From NCBI GenBank assembly GCA_002269645.1, contig NIVC01000920.1, positions 1 through 64,000 on the forward strand: a DNA stretch of 64,000 nt, in the 5' to 3' direction. Positions 35,943 through 47,000 of this stretch are shown piece after piece. How positions within the stretch are numbered: position 1 is the first letter of the stretch; each line of letters starts with the position of its first letter. Made by a program: the position numbers and the translations under genes. The stretch comes from Macrostomum lignano. Lineage: Eukaryota. The notes beneath the pieces are model-generated. The model made no database searches. It saw only the letters and a program-made list of their open reading frames with translations, and had not been told where the DNA came from.

Positions 35943-36722
35943 CCACCTGTCCCATCCTAAATCCCACCTGTCCCATCCTAAATCCTCACCTGTCCCATTC
36001 TAAATCCTCAACTGTCCGATCCTAAATCCCACCTGTCCCATCCTAAATCCTCACCTGTCCCATCCTAAATCCTCACCCTGTCCCATCCTAAATCCCATGG
36101 CCACCTGTCCCATCCTAAATCCCATGGCCACCTGTCTCATTCTAAATCCCACCTGTCCCATCCTAAACCCCCACCTGTCCCATCCTAAATCCCACCTGTC
36201 CCATCCTAAATCCCACCTGTCCCATCCTAAATCCCACCTGTCCCATCCTAAATCCCACCTGTCCCATCCTAAATCCCACCTGTCCCATCCTAAATCCCAC
36301 CTGTCCCATCCTAAATCCCACCTGTCCCATCCTAAATCCCACCTGTCCCATCCTAAATCCCACCTGTCCCATCCTAAATCCCACCTGTCCCATCCTAAAT
36401 CCCATGGCCACCTGTCCCATCCTAAATCCCATGGCCACCTGTCCCATCCTAAATCCCATGGCCACCTGTCCCATCCTAAATCCCATGGCCACCTGTCCCA
36501 TCATAAATCCCATGGCCACCTGTCCCATCCTAAATCCCATGGCCACCTGTCTCATTCTAAATCCCACCTGTCCCATCCTAAATCCCATGGCCACCTGTCT
36601 CATTCTAAATCCTACCTGTCCCATCCTAAATCCCATGGCCACCTGTCCCATCCTAAATCCCATGGCCACCTGTCTCATCCTAAATCCCATGGCCACCTGT
36701 CTCATCCTAAATCCCTACCTGT
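35943..36722. repeat. 21/27-bp minisatellite (CCACCTGTCCCATCCTAAATC +/- CCATGG)
   Basis: Two unit lengths differing by a 6-bp insertion. Confidence 0.92.
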
Positions 36723-37184: not shown

Positions 37185-37770
37185 TGATCTGGGGAGGGGT
37201 GAAGGGTGAGGGGTGGGGTGGGTGATCTAGGGAGGGGTGAAGGTGAGGGGTGGGGTGGGTGATCTGGGAGGGGTGAAGGGTGAGGGGTGGGGTGGGTGAT
37301 CTAGGGAGGGGTGAAAGGTGAGGGGTGGGGTGGGTGATCTGGGGAGGGGTGAAAGATGAGGGGTGGGGTGGGTGATCTAGGGAGGGGTGAAAGGTGAGGG
37401 GTGGGGTGGGTGATCTGGGAGGGGTGAAGGGTGAGGGGTGGGGTGGGTGATCTAGAGAGGGGTGAAAGGTGAGGGGTGGGGTGGGTGATCTGGGGAGAGC
37501 CGAAGAGTGAGGGGTGGCTGGGTGATCTGGGGAGGGCTGAAAAGGAAGGAGTGGCTGGGTGATCTAGGGAGGGGTGAAAGGTGAGGGTTGGGGTGGGTGA
37601 TCTGGGGAGGGGTGAAAGGTGAGGGGTGGGGTGGGTGATCTGGGAAGGAGTGAAGGGTGAGGGGTGGGGTGAGTGATCTGGGAGCGGTGGCTGGGTGATC
37701 TGGGGAGGGCTGAAGAGTGAGGGGTGGGGTGGGTGATCTGGGAAGTGGTTGCTTGATCTGAGGGTGGGGT
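37185..37770. repeat. ~38-bp G-rich minisatellite
   Basis: gggtgatctggggaggggtgaaaggtgaggggtggggt, about 14 copies. Confidence 0.9.
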
Positions 37771-38051: not shown

Positions 38052-41000
38052 TCAATAATTGGCTGATGGTCGAAATCCGATAGAACTCTCGGTAAGTTGC
38101 GTTTGAATAGTCGCTGAAAGTTGTGGGTTACTTTATAAGTGCTGGATCCAGCAACCCACCCTCTATGATCCAGCAACCCACCCTCTATGATCCAGCAACC
38201 CACCCTCTATGATTCAGGAATCCACCCTCTGTGATTCAGGAACACAGCATGCATTCTAGATCTTCTAGGATCTAGGTAATACTTAGGATTCACAATGTAC
38301 ACATTGCTCTTGACACACTAAGAGCATATGCACCCGAATAGCAAGTAGCTCACTTGTCAGAGTAATCCGCCTGGTTTTTGTGGGTCTTGCGGAACAAATT
38401 TGCTAGCTTGAAGGCCAAAACCAGACAGGGCAGCATACAGATTAGGCACAGTCCCATGCCGGCCCAGAAACCGTTCAATGGCCGAAGAAGTTTCACGCAG
38501 GGTCCATCAATCAGACTCTTCAACTTCTGGTGCAGTTCAGCGCAGTTTGCCGCGGCACCGACCACCAGCTCGATTGTGTCCTGTAAAATTTGTCCATTGT
38601 CAAATGGAGTCTAATCATCTAATGGGGTGGTGGGTGCAATGGGGTGGTGGGTGCAATGGGGTGGTGGGTGCAATGGGTCGATGGGTGCAATGGGGTGGTG
38701 GGGCATTGGGTTGGTGGGTGCAATGGGGTGATGGGTGCAATGGGGTGGTGGGTGCAATGGGGTGATGGGTGCAATGGGGTGGTGGGTGCAATGGGGTGGT
38801 GGGTGCAATGGGGTGGTGGGTGCAATGGGGTGATGGGTGCAATGGGGTGGTGGGTGCAATGGGGTGGTGGGTGCAATGGGGTGGTGGGTGCAATGGGGTG
38901 ATGGGTGCAATGGGGTGGTGGGTGCAATGGGGTGATGGGTGCAATGGGGTGGTGGGTGCAATGGGGTGATGGGTGCAATGGGGTGGTGGGTGCAATGGGG
39001 TGATGGGTGCAATGGGGTGGTGGGTGCAATGGGGTGGTTGGTGCAATTGGGTTGAAGCCTTGAAGGGATGTATCCTAGGGACTTTGTTTTAACGAGATGA
39101 AATTCGGATAAAATGGCTTTTACCTGAACTTTAAACCCAAGCTGTGCAGTTAGATTAGCCATAGCCACTTTAATCGCAATCTCGATGTTGTACAAGGTGT
39201 GCACAGAGTTATGTGCATCGCGCAGTCTATTCGTGATTTCTGACACAGTTGCGTTAAGCTGACGGAGCGAGGTGCGCAGCCCGTCCAGGCTCATAAACTG
39301 CGACTGCTGCAACATCTCCGCCTGGCGCATGTTCAAGTTCAGGTAGTTGAACAGGGCCACAAATCTGGATAGAGATGAAGGGGTTGGTGGTAATTACGGA
39401 CTAATCGGCCTCACGGCCCTAGAACCCTTCATTGCCTCAGCACCCTCACTCCCCTAGCAACCTCACTCCCCCAGCACCCTTCATTGCCCCAGCACCCCTC
39501 ATTGCCCCACCATCCTCACACCGCCAGCACCCTCATTGCCCCAGTATCCCTCATTGCCCCAGCACCCTCACTCCCCCGGCACCCTTCATTGCCCCAGCAC
39601 CTCTCATTGCCCCAGCACAACTCATTGCCCCAGCACCCCTCATTGCCCCAGCACTCTCACTACCCCAGCACCCTTCATTGCCCCAGCACCCCTCATTGCC
39701 CCACCATCCTCACACCGCCAGCACCCTCATTGCCCCAGTATCCCTCATTGCCCCAGCACCCTCACTCCCCCGGCACCCTTCATTGCCCCAGCACCTCTCA
39801 TTGCCCCAGCACAACTCATTGCCCCAGCACCCCTCATTGCCCCAGCACTCTCACTACCCCAGCACCCTTCATTGCCCCAGCACCCCTCATTGCCCCAGCA
39901 CTCTCACTACCCCAGCACCCTTCATTGCCCCAGCACCCCTCATTGCCCCAGCACAACTCATTGCCCCAGCACCCCTCATTGCCCCAGCACCCCTCATTGC
40001 CCCAGCACCCCTCATTGCCCCAGCACCCCTCATTGCCCCAGCACCCCTCATTGCCCCAGTACCTCATTGCCTCAGCACCCCTCATTGCCCCAGCACCCCT
40101 CATTGCCCCAGCACCCCTCATTGCCCCAGCACCCCTCATTGCCCCAGTACCTCATTGCCTCAGCACTGCTCCAATTCCGCTTACCTGGCCTTGTCGGTGG
40201 CCTTAGAAGCCGTGATAGAGATATTTTGAATCGCAGCAAACACAGACTCGGAGCCTTCAATCAGCGGCTTGTGCAACTCGTTCAGGAAGGGTATCAGTGG
40301 CTGAGCAGCCGCAGCCGCAGACACGGATTCGGCGTGGGTGAAATTGAGATCTAAAGCCACCTTGGCAACTAGATCGGAACGCCGTTTCATCAGCAGGTCA
40401 TTGCTTTCATTAACGAAACCGTACACTCTTTGAGAAATGTGCCTTCCTTGAACCAGATTCTGAATGTTTAATGCAGCCGTGATGGACTCGTTGCCTTTGC
40501 TGCAGCCCTCAAGGAGGCCGCTGACCAGATTTAACGAATAGACGGACAGGTCAGGCGAAGAGAATCGCATAAACTGGTTGAGGTCGGAGTCCAGCTCCTT
40601 GTAGCCGCTGGCGCCCGCCCGACCAGTGAGGTAGCGACAGACCTCAGTGTCTGCGAGATGAGGGAGAGCGGAGTTTTGCCATTTACAATCCCATTCGTTA
40701 GTCCCAATTCACATTCAAGTGACTATTACGTCCACTTTCAGGCCCTGCATATTTAAATGCCTTTACAGATTCTTAAATATCCAAGATAACCACACAGATT
40801 GCCACCCAGATCCTCACCCAAATCCACACCCAGATCCCCACCCAAATCCACACCCAGATCCCCACCCAAATCCATACCCAGATCCCCACCCAGATCCCCA
40901 CCCAGATTCCCACCCAGATCCCACTCAGATCCCCACCCAGATCCCCACCCAGATTCCCATCCAGATTCCTACTCAGATCCCCACCCAGATCCCCACCCAG

Positions 41001-44000
41001 ATCCAGATCCCCACCCAGATCCCCACCCAGATCCCCACCTAGATCCCCACCGAGATCCCCACCCAGATCCCCACCCAGATCCCCACCCACATCCCCATCC
41101 ACATCCCCACTCAGATTCCAAACCCAAATCCCCACCCAGATCCACCCGAGCTGCCCAGACTCACCGCTGAGCCCCCCAGACAGGAACAGGGCCAAGGTGA
41201 CAATGAACAGCAGGGCGTAGCTGATGAAGCCGATGACGAGGCCTACAGTGAGGCAGTCGGCGCCAACTCCTTTGTTGCAGCAGCGGGCGTCCTCGTAAGG
41301 CGGCTCGCCGCACAGACCGTACATGACGCCGAAGTACCAGAGCACGATGACCACTGAGGCCAGACTGGCGATGGCTATGAATGATCCGTAGCGAATCAGG
41401 TCGAGGTGCGCGGCGGTCTCATCCAGACTGGAAGCCCTCTGGGTCACGGGGTTCACTACGGTGCTGTTCACTTTGTAGCTGTTGTTGAGTATGAATGAGT
41501 TTAAACTGCTGAACAGGTGCTCCACTGTGCCCCAGATCACCTGAAGCTCTGCACTGCTGTTCATTGACTTGACAACCGCGTTCGCATAGTCAGTTACCTG
41601 CGGGTGGAGCGGGCTTAACTCTATGCGTTGCACTCGACAACAACACAACAAAATGCACTGTCAATTAAGGTCTTAAGAAAAAAGGCTGAGCTACAAAATG
41701 ATCCTGTAGAATCCCTAGAATTTAGGCTCTTCATTTATTTTGCTGATAGTAGATTCCTCTCCAAGGTGAGTCTTTACAGTATGAGACCGTCTTTACGGCA
41801 AAATAGGTTGTAGCCCAGTGGTTAGAGCGTCGGACTCACGACTGAAAGGTCGAGGGTTCGATTCCCGACCCACTGGGAATATTTTGCATCCTTGAGCACG
41901 ACACTTAACTCTGCATTGCTTCAGCTCACCCAGCTGTAAAATGGGTGCCAGCAGGGGTTATTGTGGCGACCCCCCAGTCCTTGGACTGAACTGCCCATTG
42001 GGACAGGTGCAATCTAGATTGAATCTAGGTTAAATAAAGCGTTATGTGCAGACAAACGTTTGAATGGAATTCATTAATTGAATTCATTGAATTCCTCTCA
42101 CAATTTCGGTTCCAACTTTGCTGACATTATTCAAAGCCTCCCTGGCGCTGAGCAACTGCAGGGTCAGCTCGGTGTCGTTGACCTCTCTCATCAGCCCGTT
42201 CAGCTGGGTGACATTGAGCAGTCCGGTCTGGCTGTCATTCTGTGTCACCCGCAGTGTTGGCAGCCGGCTGCCAATCAGGTTGCAGTCGGCTTGGATGGCG
42301 TTGAACGGGCAGTCCAGCTCGATGCCGCTGAGATTCGAACGCAGCTCGCCCAGCATCAGGTTGAGATTGTTGAGATTGCCCGAGTAGTTGCTATGATGCC
42401 GCACGTAGCTCTCAGAATGCCTGTGCGCATCGCCGAGCAGCTGCATCGCTCGAAGAGCGTCAGCAAGCACCGCGTCAGCCTTACTGCTGCTGCCCAGAGT
42501 GTCCCGCAGGCTCACCATGGAGATGCCCACTGCGGGATAGATATCAGCTATAAGCGCGTTCACGGCCGAGAAGCTGTTGTTCCTGGCCCGCCTGGGCACT
42601 TCGGACAGCATGCCGGCCACGCCAGCCATGTGCAAGCTGAAGTTCGCCAGCATGGTCGGCTTCCCCCGGCTTGGGTCCATCTGCTCACGGACCAGCTCGT
42701 TCGAGATGAAGGCCAGCACCACTCCCAGCCTGCGGGACGGAGATGGTTGGCGACCGTGGTGTTTCGCTGTCTGCCCTCCGCTGTCTCCCCTCCGCTGTCT
42801 CCCCTCCGCTGTCTCCCCTCCGCTGTCTCCCCTCCACTGTCTGCCCTCCGCTGTCTCCCCTCCGCTGTCTCCCCTCCGCTGTCTCCCCTCCACTGTCTCC
42901 CCTCCGCTGTCTCCCCACCGCTGTCTCCCCTCCACTGTCTCCCCTCCGCTGTCTCCTTTCCGCTGTCTCCCCTCCGCTGTCTCCCCTCCGCTGTCTCCCC
43001 TCCGCTGTCTCCCCTCCGCTGTCTCCCCTCCGCTGTCTCCCCTCCGCTGTCTCCCCTCCACTGTCTCCCCTCCGCTGTCTCCCCTCCGCTGTCTCCCCTC
43101 CACTGTCTCCTTTCCGCTGTCTCCCCTCCGCTGTCTCCCCTCCGCTGTCTCCCCTCCACTGTCTCCCCTCCACTGTCTGCCCTCCGCTGTCTCCCCTCCG
43201 CTGTCTGCCCTCCGCTGTCTCCCCTCCGCTGTCTCCCCTCCACTGTCTCCCCTCCACTGTCTGCCCTCCACTGTCTCCCCTCCGCTGTCTCCCCTCCACT
43301 GTCTGCCCTCCGCTGTCTCCCCTCCGCTGTCTGCCCTCCGCTGTCTCCCCTCCACTGTCTGCCCTCCACTGTCTGCCCTCCACTGTCTCCCCTCCACTGT
43401 CTCCCCTCCACTGTCTGCCCTCCGCTGTCTCCCCTCCGCTGTCTCCCCTCCGCTGTCTCCCCTCCACTGTCTCCCCTCCGCTGTCTCCCCTCCACTGTCT
43501 GCCCTCCGCTGTCTCCCCTCCGCTGTCTGCCCTCCACTGTCTGCCCTCAACTGTCTGCCCTCCACTGTCTCCCCTCCGCTGTCTCCCCTCCACTGTCTGC
43601 CCTCCGCTGTCTCCCCTCCACTGTCTGCCCTCCGCTGTCTCCCCTCCGCTGTCTCCCCTCCGCTGTCTCCCCTCCGCTGTCTGCCCTCCACTGTCTGCCC
43701 TCCACTGTCTGCCCTCCGCTGTCTCCCCTCCACTGTCTGCCCTCCGCTGTCTGCCCTCCGCTGTCTCCCCTCCGCTGTCTCCCCTCCGCTGTCTGCCCTC
43801 CGCTGTCTCCCCTCCACTGTCTGCCCTCCACTGTCTCCCCTCCGCTGTCTGTCCTCCACTGTCTGCCTTCCGCTGTCTCCCCTCCGCTGTCTCCCCTCCG
43901 CTGTCTCCCCTCCGCTGTCTCCCCTCCACTGTCTGCCCTCCGCTGTCTCCCCTCCGCTGTCTCCCCTCCACTGTCTGCCCTCCGCTGTCTCCCCTCCACT

Positions 44001-47000
44001 GTCTGCCCTCCACTGTCTCCCCTCCACTGTCTGCCCTCCACTGTCTCCCCTCCACTGTCTGCCCTCCACTGTCTCCCCTCCACTGTCTGCCCTCCGCTGT
44101 CTCCCCTCCACTGTCTCCCCTCCGCTGTCTGCCCTCCGCTGTCTCCCCTCCGCTGTCTCCCCTCCACTGTCTCCCCTCCGCTGTCTGCCCTCCACTGTCT
44201 CCCCTCCGCTGTCTCCCCTCCACTGTCTCCCCTCCACTGTCTCCCCTCCGCTGTCTGCCCTCCACTGTCTCCCCTCCGCTGTCTGCCCTCAACTGTCTGC
44301 CCTCCACTGTCTGCCCTCAACTGTCTGCCCTCCACTGTCTGCCCTCCACTGTCTGCCCTAAGCTAAGAGGAATCTGGAAAATTTCCAAGCCAGTCATGCT
44401 GGACAGTTCCATAAAGTTTAATTATAACATAAAATTTATCAGAGCCACACTCTAAAGTGAAAATCGTGGTTCAGTTTAATCATATCTGATAGATCTTACA
44501 GTGTCAGTATAAACCCTTAGCCTTTTCTAGAAACGAGAGGTAGCAGTTTAGCGAACTTCATCTGCTGTTGCACCTGACAAATAAAATTTTACAACATTTT
44601 TGAATCGTCAATTTACTATGAAATTTACTTGTTAAATTGCTGCAACTTAAGTTTTCACTGCAGGTTTGTTTACTGCTTTGCTTTGCAGATTGCAGAAGAA
44701 TTTCAATACGACTTTACTCTGGCCGTAGCTATTTGGCTATTGAAACAGGCCAGTAGTATTTGCCAGAATGTTCCATATCCCAGTCTGACCCTTCCATATC
44801 CCAGTCTGACCCTTCCATATCCCAGTCTGACCCTTCCATATCCCAGTCTGACCCTTCCATATCCCAGTTTGACCCTTCCATATCCCAGTCTGACCCTTCC
44901 ATATCCCAGTCTGACCCTTCCATATCCCAGTCTGACCCTTCCATATCCCAGTCTGACCCTTCCATATCCCAGTCTGACCCTTCCATATCCCAGTTTGACC
45001 CTTCCATATCCCAGTCTGACCCTTCCATATCCCAGTCTGACCCTTCCATATCCCAGTTTGACCCTTCCATATCCCAGTCTGACCCTTCCATATCCCAGTC
45101 TGACCCTTCCATATCCCAGTCTGACCCTTCCATATCCCAGTCTGAGCCTTCCATATCCCAGTCTGACCCTTCCATATCCCAGTCTGACCCTTCCATATCC
45201 CAATTTGACCCATCCACACCACAACATGACCCGTTCTCATGCCAGCCTGAACCACTCCAGACAAAATCCCGGCACTCACACCATGGCGGTGGTGAGCACA
45301 ATGAGCAGCACACCGTAGAGCACTCTGCGCCAATCCGAGCCTCGCTTCTCCATCTGACTGCCTTTTCCGCCGCAGCTCTTGCAGCAGCAGCGGCAGCAGC
45401 ACGTGATTAGACCGGCCAGGGGAACGAAAATGATTAAGAATAGGCCGATGCAGACTAGAATGAAGTAGCCCTTCATGCTCTCCCAGTAGCGGCTGATTAT
45501 CTGCGGTGTGAGGAGCAAAAACGGGAAATTGTGCCATAGACATTGAGGGTGAGGGGACGAGATTGAGGGGCTGAGAGATGAGAGGTTAAGGGGTGAGGGG
45601 ACCGGGTTAAGGGGGGGAAGAGTGAAGGGTGAGGGGTTGAGGGGTGAGAGGTTGAGGGGTGAGAGGTTGAGGGGTGAGGGGTTAAGGGGTGAGGGAGGGG
45701 TGAGGGGTTGAGGGGTGAGAGGTTGAGGGGTGAGAGGTTGAGGGGTGAGGGGTTGAGGGGTGAGGGGTTGAGGGGTTAGGGAGAGGTGAGGGGTTGAGGG
45801 GTGAGAGGTTGAGGGGTGAGGGGTTGAGGGGTGAGGGGTTGAGGGGCGAGGAAGTACATTGAGTATCTAACATAATTAATAATAATGTCATAAATTAGTG
45901 TAGAACCCAGCCTAGATGAGAGAATAGAGAGAAAGTCCTAAGCCGGGGTTGAGGGGTGAGGGGTTGAAGGGCGAGGGGTTGAGGGGTTGGGGGGTTGAGG
46001 GGTGAGGGGTTGAGGGGTGAGGGGTTGAGGGGCGAGGGGTTGAGGGGTTGAGGGGTGAGGGGTGAGGGGTTGAGGGGTTGAGGGGTGAGGGGTTGAGGGG
46101 TGAGGGAGGGGTGAGGGGTTAAGGGTGAGAGGTTGAGGGGTGAAGGTTTGAGGGGTGGGGGTTGAGAGGTGAGAGGTTGGGGGTGAAGGGTTTAGGGTTG
46201 AGGGGTTTAGGGTTGAGGGGTTGAGGGGTGAGGGGTTGAGGGGTGAGAGGTTAAGAGGTGAGGGGTTGAGGGGTGAGAGGTTGAGAGGTGAGGGGTTGAG
46301 AGGGGAGAAGGGGTGAAGGGACGTGGTTGAGGTGCTGGGGGTGAGGAGTTGAGGGGTGAGGGGACATGGTAAAGAGTTGAATGGATTAGGTTCAGGGGGT
46401 GAGGGGACGGGGTTGAGAAGCTGAGGTTGAAACTGGACCGAAGTTCAAAGAGACGGGGCATTCCATTTGGCTGATTTGGACGCCTGCCAATATTTGGCAT
46501 GAACGCTATACTTCTGGGTATAAAAAACTCTCAGCACAAAAATCAAGGCGATTCAGCACGAAACAAAAACAAACAATTAATAGCATTTGTTCGACTTCCG
46601 GTTAGCAGGGAAATTTTTTTAATCGTTGCGGCTCAGTGAAAACGCTGGACCGCATTTCCCTTGCAGTTTCTGTTGCGCCGCTTCCTGCCAGTTCTCCAGA
46701 TCAGCATGCCCTCCCAAAAAAACCCTCAGTGCTGAGTGAACTCACCTTCTGCCAATTATAACTGGGCGGGCTGCTGCTGCTGTTGCTGCTTTTGACAGTA
46801 TCATCTGAAATGAGCAGCAGAGCGAAACACAAAAGTTGAAGCGATGAATTCGGGCTTCAGCAGGCGTTGCACTAGGAATGAAAGCCAGTTTTGTACTGAA
46901 CTTTCTGCTTTCTGCTATACAGGATAAGAATGTATAGATCGATGTGTCAGACTGGAATGTGAATGCGTCAGAATAGGAATGTATAGATGTGTCAGACTGG

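What the first reader, a model, noticed from the sequence alone, without database searches (positions are those of the whole stretch)
41678..41810. Spliced-leader-like sequence lacking its donor, joined head-to-head with a SINE inside a prominin intron
Seen: 33 nt on the gene's sense strand with a 5' hairpin (CCGT-AAAG-ACGG) starting 4-6 nt from the 5' end of an oppositely oriented SINE. Downstream are small stems (CCTA/TAGG, CTACA/TGTAG), an Sm-site-like ATTTTG (41694-41699) and a T6 run (41678-41683), giving a possible ~120-nt RNA. From memory it matches the Macrostomum SL at 30/33 nt but diverges before the terminal ATG and GT donor. Inference, three options: (a) an undescribed SL-related snRNA without a donor, analogous to nematode SmY-type helpers; (b) a second SL class or its pseudogene; (c) two RNAs retro-inserted from opposite sides of one break. 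Each would be notable.
Basis: partly seen in the sequence, partly recalled or inferred. Interest (0 to 1): 0.8.

Follow-up and report, generated by a model that had tools for sequence, protein, structure and literature searches.

The report
Inverted spliced-leader fragment on a SINE insertion
A 33-base copy of the flatworm spliced leader sits back to back with a SINE inside one pair of target-site duplications, so it is most likely a by-product of that SINE's insertion into a prominin intron and not a new spliced-leader-type RNA gene.

Summary
Window 41799→41767 (minus strand) matches positions 1-33 of the published 45-nt Macrostomum spliced leader at 30/33. Identity then drops to 3/12, so the terminal ATG and the donor are missing. 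The window is M. lignano, inside a 504-nt prominin intron.

The proposed ~120-nt RNA does not hold up. Two canonical macrostomid SL RNA genes recovered from public contigs gave a profile that matches only model positions 1-37. The downstream 90 nt, with the "Sm site" and T6 run, gets no hit, does not fold better than shuffles, and has no gene-type upstream flank.

A 12/13 direct repeat, ATTCCTCTC(A)CAA, occurs nowhere else in the window. It brackets exactly [inverted SL 1-33] + AAAA + [tRNA-headed CORE-type SINE with an (ATTGAATTC)n tail]. The right copy contains the host intron's GTGAGA donor. So the downstream 90 nt is older intron sequence.

Best reading is one retroposition event. The SINE was copied from one nick, and an SL RNA (or SL-capped mRNA) was primed internally from the other nick and copied to its 5' end. 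This is twin priming, as described for inverted, 3'-truncated U1/U2/U5/U6 chimeras with L1 in mammals. Options (a) and (b) are not supported.

The parts
41767..41799 (-). Copy of spliced-leader positions 1-33 (30/33; T18A, C24T, G25A). The 5' end is complete and the 3' end is truncated before ATTTATTGCATG and the GTAAG donor.
   Evidence: nhmmer E = 1.9e-6.
41765..41766 (.). A 2-nt junction (CC on the minus strand) between the SL copy and the left duplication copy. If SL homology is read through position 37, two mismatches are followed by a TT microhomology with the duplication.
   Evidence: Read from the sequence.
41753..41764 (+). Left copy of the target-site duplication, ATTCCTCTC-CAA. On the gene strand it reads TTG-GAGAGGAAT, a duplicated host donor that has lost the T of its GT.
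   Evidence: (D9).
42091..42103 (+). Right copy of the target-site duplication, ATTCCTCTCACAA. On the gene strand it reads TT|GTGAGAGGAAT, the last 2 exon bases plus the working 5' splice site. It overlaps the SINE tail by 4 nt (ATTC).
41800..41803 (+). AAAA between the two 5' ends. It could be non-templated addition, the SINE RNA leader, or SL gene upstream TTT. This is unresolved.
41804..41873 (+). tRNA-like head of the SINE, with box A TAGCCCAGTGG at 41811-41821 and box B GGTTCGATTCC at 41855-41865.
   Evidence: Rfam tRNA 17.6 bits, below the gathering score of 29. ARAGORN calls no tRNA.
41874..42060 (+). SINE body with a CORE-type (MIR-like) central domain at about 41892-41946.
   Evidence: A 33/40 match to a SINE fragment lies in L001:153-191.
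42061..42094 (+). SINE 3' tail of short tandem units: ATGGAATTC, ATTGAATTC, ATTGAATTC.
   Evidence: (D1, D3).
41598..41752 (-). Older intron sequence, not part of the insert. It holds the 'Sm-like' ATTTTG, the small stems and the T6 run. With GTGAGAGGAAT it reconstructs a 166-nt pre-insertion intron.
   Evidence: Position outside the duplication. No SL RNA profile or CM match. Fold z = +0.72.
41598..42101 (-). Host prominin intron (504 nt, phase 0), with donor GTGAGA at 42101-42096 and acceptor AG at 41599-41598. The UniRef model uses an alternative acceptor 57 nt further on.

Best explanation
This is one retroposition event, not a gene.

A tRNA-headed CORE-type SINE inserted 11 nt into a 166-nt prominin intron of Macrostomum lignano by target-primed reverse transcription. 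The minus-strand nick primed on the SINE RNA's (ATTGAATTC)n tail, with a 4-nt ATTC microhomology, and the copy ran to the SINE RNA's 5' end.

The staggered nick on the other strand gave a second 3'-OH. It primed inside the leader of an abundant SL-bearing RNA, around position 34-37, and the copy ran off at that RNA's 5' end. The template was either the SL RNA itself or any trans-spliced mRNA; the two cannot be told apart.

The two cDNAs were joined 5' end to 5' end, with AAAA between them. Gap repair duplicated 13 nt of target, which included the host 5' splice site.

What is shown:
- SL homology is limited to positions 1-33.
- The SL copy is in inverse orientation to the SINE, with the two 5' ends abutting.
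- A 12/13 duplication brackets the composite.
- No SL RNA features lie downstream.

What is inferred:
- The mechanism (twin priming).
- The RNA nature of the SL template.
- That the three substitutions and the lost T in the downstream donor copy arose after insertion.
For: 1. SL match is 30/33 for positions 1-33, then 3/12. The profile hit covers model positions 1-37 only, E = 1.9e-6. This break is abrupt, not a gradual decay.
2. ATTCCTCTC occurs only twice in 128 kb of both strands. The 13-mer with up to 1 edit also occurs only at 41753-41764 and 42091-42103, on the same strand.
3. A match that good between the SINE's 3' flank and the 204 nt left of the SINE occurs in 138 of 20,000 shuffles. 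It ends 2 nt from the SL homology boundary and begins in the last tail unit. That brings the joint chance to roughly 2e-4 (my estimate).
4. The SL copy reaches the published 5' end (G1) and faces the SINE's tRNA-like 5' end across 4 nt.
5. The downstream 41678-41765 is not SL RNA-like:
   - nhmmer finds nothing there, even at E ≤ 100.
   - The covariance model gives only 9.9 bits (E 0.73) for 41780-41799.
   - The fold has z = +0.72, against z = -3.3 for the canonical gene.
6. There is precedent. 3'-truncated U1, U2, U5 and U6 copies in inverse orientation to L1, flanked by TSDs and primed internally, were attributed to twin priming (PMC4476161). Antisense tRNA and 5S chimeras were attributed the same way (PMC13174262).
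Against: - No empty site or second copy could be examined. No M. lignano genome sequence other than this window could be reached with these tools.
- The duplication has one indel.
- The junction shows no clean microhomology: CAA|GG|TGAGTC is observed, where CAA|AT|TGAGTC is expected if AA paired with U36-U37.
- The three bases just upstream of the SL copy on its own strand (TTT) match the TTT that precedes +1 in both canonical SL RNA genes. That would also fit a DNA-derived copy.
- One scoring scheme gives a weak colinear similarity of the downstream stretch to the SL RNA 3' half (p≈0.005). It fades to 0.07-0.13 with other schemes.
- Twin priming has been documented for mammalian L1, not for the unknown LINE partner of this SINE.
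Confidence: 0.6

Rival explanations
1. 5' transduction or a composite SINE subfamily. The inverted SL piece was already joined to the 5' end of the source SINE copy and was carried along in one RNA that started about 40 nt upstream. The chimera would then have formed at another locus.
For: It explains the same duplication-bounded insert and the abutting 5' ends. AAAA could be flank sequence.
Against: Pol III SINE transcripts normally start at the tRNA-like head. It only moves the origin of the SL/SINE junction to another locus. No other SINE copy is in the window to compare.
Confidence: 0.12
2. Two independent events. An old SL RNA retropseudogene or gene fragment of about 110-120 nt sat in the intron, and a SINE later landed by chance at its 5' edge. 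The 12/13 repeat would be coincidence.
For: There is a weak colinear similarity of 41690-41720 to the hairpin 2, Sm and hairpin 3 region of a canonical SL RNA (score 24, p≈0.005, top of the window scan by 1 point). A T-rich 7/8 repeat, CCTATTTT/CCTTTTTT, flanks 41687-41799 (read).
Against: - The similarity is not robust (p 0.015-0.13 with other scoring).
- It disappears with a two-species profile and with the CM.
- The canonical 3' half is highly conserved between two macrostomids (109-column alignment, 93% mean column identity). A pseudogene that is 91% identical in its first 33 nt should therefore still be recognisable downstream.
- Positions 34-56 are simply absent.
- The SINE would have no duplication of its own.
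- Landing within 4 nt of the SL 5' end has a chance of about 1%.
Confidence: 0.1
3. DNA-level filler. A fragment of an SL RNA gene (DNA), not an RNA copy, was captured during end-joining at the 5' junction of the SINE insertion.
For: TTT directly upstream of G1 is shared with both canonical genes. The 2-nt junction lacks clear microhomology.
Against: The match ends within 3-4 nt of the RNA's 5' end, which is what run-off reverse transcription predicts. TTT alone has a chance of about 2% in T-rich DNA, and A-tailing by reverse transcriptases is common (general knowledge). No further upstream gene flank is present.
Confidence: 0.08
4. A functional donor-less SL-related snRNA (SmY-like helper) or a second SL class, transcribed from 41799 to the T6 run.
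For: The 5' 33 nt are well kept. An AUUUUG and a T run lie downstream.
Against: - No Rfam hit.
- Fold z = +0.72.
- No match to the conserved SL RNA 3' half.
- No upstream promoter homology. The upstream space is a SINE and then, 11 nt on, a coding exon.
- Single copy in the window.
- The predicted CUACA/UGUAG stem would bury the 'Sm site'.
Confidence: 0.03

Closest known systems
Inverted, 3'-truncated snRNA/L1 chimeras attributed to twin priming (U1, U2, U5, U6; Doucet et al. 2015, PMC4476161, 'Group IV' pseudogenes); antisense tRNA/LINE-1 and 5S/LINE-1 chimeras (PMC13174262); twin priming itself (Ostertag & Kazazian 2001, cited there)
   Same: A small nuclear RNA copy with an intact 5' end and a truncated 3' end. 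It lies in inverse orientation to a retroposon, with the two 5' ends meeting in the middle. One target-site duplication flanks the composite, and priming was internal on the snRNA.
   Different: The second template here is a spliced-leader sequence, which mammals lack. The partner is a CORE-type SINE rather than L1. The host is a free-living flatworm and the LINE that supplied the enzyme is unknown. Microhomology at the junction is at best 2 nt.
Canonical Macrostomum SL RNA gene (109 nt; Ustyantsev & Berezikov 2021, PMC8629364; examples recovered here at L001:615-723 and L005:1589-1695)
   Same: The first 33 nt match (30/33), including the published 5' end.
   Different: It lacks SL positions 34-45 with the ATG, the GTAAG donor, hairpins 2 and 3, the Sm-type site and the gene flank.
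Partial-leader loci associated with LTR and LINE elements in parasitic flatworms (Calvelo et al. 2025, PMC12582326), and relict leaders in retrocopies of trans-spliced mRNAs
   Same: A leader fragment sits next to a mobile element with no other SL RNA feature.
   Different: Those loci are explained as retro-integration of trans-spliced transcripts. That predicts the leader's 3' end joined in sense to the element body. Here the leader's 3' end is missing and the orientation is inverse.
Nematode SmY RNAs
   Same: None beyond a U-rich motif.
   Different: No Rfam SmY hit, no two-hairpin fold around the motif, and no evidence of a gene.

Membership tests
Macrostomum SL RNA gene | Complete 45-nt leader ending in ATG | tested here: not met
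   30/33 for positions 1-33, then 3/12 for positions 34-45.
Macrostomum SL RNA gene | 5' splice donor (GTAAG) directly after the leader | tested here: not met
   No GT follows the match. The only downstream GT is inside TTTTGTAG. The canonical genes have GTAAG.
Macrostomum SL RNA gene | Conserved 3' half: hairpin 2, Sm-type site, hairpin 3 | tested here: not met
   The CM built from two canonical genes gives 9.9 bits, E 0.73, for 41780-41799 only. nhmmer finds nothing downstream at E ≤ 100. Fold z = +0.72 against -3.3 for the canonical gene.
Macrostomum SL RNA gene | Gene-type upstream flank or promoter | tested here: not met
   Only TTT is shared with L001 and L005. The upstream sequence is the SINE, then the exon.
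Macrostomum SL RNA gene | Use as a leader on mRNAs, or expression | not testable with these tools
   No RNA-seq access.
SmY-type or other Sm-class helper snRNA | Stem-loops flanking an Sm site, with a family match | tested here: not met
   No Rfam match at the gathering score, or at E ≤ 10, in 41560-42140. The MFE fold puts AUUUUG inside a hairpin and is no better than shuffles.
Twin-priming snRNA/retroposon chimera | snRNA copy 5'-complete and 3'-truncated | tested here: met
   It starts at published G1 and stops at position 33-37.
Twin-priming snRNA/retroposon chimera | Inverse orientation, with the 5' ends of both copies meeting internally | tested here: met
   The SL copy is on the minus strand, ending at 41799. 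The SINE head is on the plus strand, from 41804.
Twin-priming snRNA/retroposon chimera | One target-site duplication flanking the whole composite, next to the retroposon's 3' tail | tested here: met
   ATTCCTCTC-CAA at 41753-41764 and ATTCCTCTCACAA at 42091-42103. This is the only such pair in 128 kb. Shuffle p = 0.007 before the positional coincidence is counted.
Twin-priming snRNA/retroposon chimera | Complementarity between target end and the snRNA at the internal priming point | tested here: inconclusive
   At most 2 nt (AA:UU at U36-U37), followed by two mismatches.
Twin-priming snRNA/retroposon chimera | Empty site in a related genome or homeolog | not testable with these tools
   Only one UniRef protein of M. 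lignano was found, and no genomic contig.
CORE-SINE superfamily | tRNA-derived head with A and B boxes | tested here: met
   Rfam tRNA alignment over 1-71/71, 17.6 bits, below the gathering score. Boxes were read from the sequence. It is not a tRNA gene.
CORE-SINE superfamily | Conserved ~45-65-nt CORE domain | tested here: inconclusive
The core is also shared with L001:153-191 at 33/40. No curated repeat library was available.
Retrocopy of a trans-spliced transcript | Leader's 3' end joined in sense to an acceptor exon or element body | tested here: not met
   The leader lacks its last 12 nt. It is followed by 2 nt and then the duplication copy.

The most novel reading that the evidence does not exclude
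The three substitutions (A18, T24, A25) may not be decay. They could mark an unannotated variant SL RNA, or the inverted SL piece may be the fixed 5' extension of a SINE subfamily. In that case M. lignano would have either a second leader class or a composite SINE that carries antisense leader sequence into many introns.
Probability: 0.08. Interest if true: 0.55.

Novelty: new member of a known kind. Interest (0 to 1): 0.3.

Why it matters
The locus should not be annotated as an SL RNA gene, a variant leader or a helper snRNA. Partial-leader hits of this kind can mislead SL RNA surveys. Large numbers of such loci had to be discarded in parasitic flatworms (PMC12582326).

If the reading is confirmed, it would be a spliced-leader example of the inverted snRNA/retroposon chimeras so far described in mammals. 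It would also indicate that second-strand priming on bystander RNAs occurs with the LINE machinery that moves CORE-type SINEs in a flatworm.

The insertion duplicated a working 5' splice site. The downstream copy has lost its GT.

Tried and rejected
- **Rfam.** The whole window at gathering scores, and 41560-42140 at E ≤ 10, gave nothing for the SL-like part.
- **Other copies in the window.** None of the 33-mer, the 16-mer or the SINE.
- **Genomic relatives through the prominin protein.** Only one UniRef entry came back and no contig. No homeolog, empty site or other M. lignano DNA was available.
- **Literature search for the 109-nt M. lignano SL RNA sequence or the variant bases.** No text hit. 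The sequence exists only as a figure in PMC8629364.
- **Collection scans with the leader pattern.**
  - Viral contigs gave none.
  - Metagenome contigs gave L001.
  - Prokaryote genome contigs gave L005.
  - The SINE pattern in viral contigs gave none.
- **Downstream 90 nt as a diverged SL RNA 3' half.**
  - By eye and with one scoring scheme it looked promising.
  - I rejected it after testing other scoring schemes, a two-gene profile and a covariance model.
- **Transposon with terminal inverted repeats.** Only an 8-nt AT-rich inverted pair was found (I13).
- **Alternative duplications around the SINE alone or the SL-like stretch alone.**
  - Around the SINE alone: CAAAATA/CACAATT, 5/7.
  - Around the SL-like stretch alone: CCTATTTT/CCTTTTTT, 7/8.
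  - Both are T-rich and not significant.
- **Shared promoter motif upstream of L001 and L005.** The apparent TAGTAGG match lies at different distances from +1, so it was not used.
Full report
**What is in the sequence**

On the minus strand, 41799→41767 reads GCCGTAAAGACGGTCTCATACTGTAAAGACTCA.
- The published Macrostomum spliced leader is GCCGTAAAGACGGTCTCTTACTGCGAAGACTCAATTTATTGCATG (M. cliftonense; M. hystrix is the same minus 2 nt; PMC10468722 suppl. Table S3).
- The M. lignano 35-mer is the same sequence from CGGTCTC onward (PMC8629364).
- The window matches positions 1-33 at 30/33 (T18A, C24T, G25A).
- It matches positions 34-45 at only 3/12, so the ATG and the donor are absent.
- The 33-mer is unique in the window and never appears in shuffles.

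**Organism and gene**

The flanking exons translate to a prominin. The only database relative is UniRef 'Prominin-1, Macrostomum lignano' (A0A1I8JQ53). It is identical over long stretches and differs only in exon-boundary choices.
- The gene is on the minus strand.
- The intron runs 42101→41598 (504 nt, phase 0). The donor is ATT|GTGAGA and the acceptor is CCCGCAG|GTAACT.
- The UniRef model uses an acceptor 57 nt further on.

**Canonical genes for comparison**

No M. lignano genome sequence other than this window could be reached. Scanning public collections with the leader pattern recovered two canonical SL RNA genes from macrostomid DNA:
- L001:615-723, in a JGI metagenome contig.
- L005:1589-1695, in a contig binned into a Flavobacteriaceae MAG.

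Both have the identical 45-nt leader, a GTAAG donor, a GATCCA/TGGATC hairpin, UAUUUUUAG and an AGCCC/GGGCU hairpin. The 109-column alignment has 93% mean column identity. This agrees with the description of the 109-nt M. lignano gene (PMC8629364). The L001 RNA folds well (z = -3.3).

**Is there a ~120-nt SL-like RNA?**

The evidence says no.
- The 122-nt candidate folds no better than shuffles (z = +0.72, 149 of 200 shuffles as good).
- A pairwise local alignment of the downstream stretch to the L001 3' half gave a colinear score of 24. That was p≈0.005 and the top of a whole-window scan, but only by one point.
- The same comparison gave p = 0.015, 0.07 and 0.13 under other scoring schemes.
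- The nhmmer profile of both canonical genes hits 41799-41763 (model 1-37, E = 1.9e-6). It reports nothing for 41678-41760 even at E ≤ 100, while unrelated minisatellite DNA scores better for the 3' half.
- The covariance model gives the locus 9.9 bits, E 0.73, for 20 nt only.
- Upstream, the window shares only TTT with the canonical genes.
- Rfam finds nothing.

**The direct repeat**

The repeat search shows ATTCCTCTC at 41753-41761 and at 42091-42099 (D9). It extends to ATTCCTCTC-CAA and ATTCCTCTCACAA.
- Neither the 9-mer nor the 13-mer (up to 1 edit) occurs anywhere else on either strand of the window.
- A match this good between the 25 nt at the SINE's 3' end and the 204 nt left of the SINE occurs in 138 of 20,000 shuffles. 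Apart from windows that overlap the two repeat copies, it occurs in roughly 4 of 1,252 real windows (my estimate).
- The left copy ends 2 nt from the point where SL homology stops. The right copy starts in the last unit of the SINE's (ATTGAATTC)n tail.
- Counting these positional coincidences, I estimate the joint chance at about 2e-4.

**What lies between the two copies**

On the plus strand the order is:
- GG
- the reverse complement of SL 33→1
- AAAA
- a SINE

The SINE has a tRNA-like head (Rfam tRNA alignment over 1-71, 17.6 bits; A and B boxes). It ends in a short-repeat tail.

On the gene strand the right repeat copy is TT|GTGAGAGGAAT, the end of the exon plus the working donor. The left copy is TTG-GAGAGGAAT, the same sequence with the T of GT missing.

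Removing the insert gives a 166-nt intron: GTGAGAGGAAT followed by CTACTATCAGC...CAG. The 'Sm site', the small stems and the T6 run all belong to that older intron.

**Mechanism**

An insert bounded by one target-site duplication has the retroposon's tail at one end. At the other end is an inverted, 5'-complete and 3'-truncated copy of a small nuclear RNA. This is the structure explained by twin priming.
- The first nick primes on the retroposon RNA.
- The 3'-OH of the second nick primes internally on another RNA and runs to that RNA's 5' end.
- The two cDNAs are then joined.

[quoted passage not shown] A 2026 survey drew the same conclusion for antisense tRNA and 5S chimeras (PMC13174262).

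Simple template switching is excluded here, because it would put the SL in the same orientation as the SINE. The template could be the SL RNA or the 5' end of any trans-spliced mRNA. Priming lies inside the leader, so the two cannot be distinguished.

**Weak points**

- I have no empty site.
- The junction lacks clean microhomology.
- The AAAA spacer could be non-templated addition, the SINE leader, or the TTT that precedes +1 in SL RNA genes. The last would fit a DNA origin.
- The weak downstream similarity cannot be called zero.

The rivals are weighted accordingly: transduction or a composite SINE 0.12, independent pseudogene plus SINE 0.10, DNA filler 0.08, functional SL-like RNA 0.03.

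**Comparison with known systems and verdict**

As an SL RNA gene the locus fails four defining features that I tested: complete leader, donor, 3' half and upstream flank. As an SmY-like RNA it has no support. As a retrocopy of a trans-spliced transcript it fails, because the leader's 3' end is missing and the orientation is inverse. This differs from the partial-leader/retroelement loci noted in parasitic flatworms (PMC12582326). It meets the three structural criteria of a twin-priming snRNA chimera that could be tested.

It is a new member of a known kind and is of modest interest.

Noticed in passing
L001:615-723 (JGI metagenome contig Ga0302322_100095745): A complete canonical Macrostomum-type SL RNA gene: a 45-nt leader identical to the published one, a GTAAG donor, two further hairpins and UAUUUUUAG. 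It lies about 1 kb upstream of a Na/K-ATPase beta-subunit gene. A partial duplicate, GCCGTAAA, sits 11 nt upstream of +1. So a macrostomid flatworm genome is present in that metagenome.
   Followed up: partly
L005:1589-1695 (JAGQZA010000190.1, 'MAG: Flavobacteriaceae bacterium HKST-UBA79'): A second canonical macrostomid SL RNA gene lies in a contig binned as a bacterial MAG. The contig's only ORF of 90 aa or more is a 110-aa low-complexity one, so it looks like flatworm DNA contaminating the bin.
   Followed up: partly
L001:153-191: A fragment of the same SINE central domain (33/40 to window 41913-41952) lies next to a (CAGG)n array. This shows the CORE-type domain is shared between macrostomid species.
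   Followed up: no
window 36000-36722, 37185-37689, 38621-39052, 39416-40166, 40790-41143, 42765-44359, 44771-45216, 45623-46363: The neighbouring introns of the prominin gene are filled with long minisatellite arrays (periods 8-38 nt, up to 114 copies). They generate long spurious ORFs on both strands.
   Followed up: no
window 41541-41597: The UniRef gene model (A0A1I8JQ53) splices to an acceptor 57 nt downstream of the CCCGCAG|GT acceptor. This drops 19 in-frame codons (VTDYANAVVKSMNSSAELQ). It is either alternative splicing or a mis-predicted boundary.
   Followed up: no
window 41753-41764: The downstream copy of the duplicated 5' splice site reads G-GAGAGG instead of GTGAGAGG. The single missing base removes a competing donor that would have pulled SINE sequence into the mRNA.
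   Followed up: no
L001:615-670 and L005:1589-1644: In the consensus fold of canonical SL RNAs, leader positions 11-29 pair with 36-56, across the donor site.
   Followed up: partly
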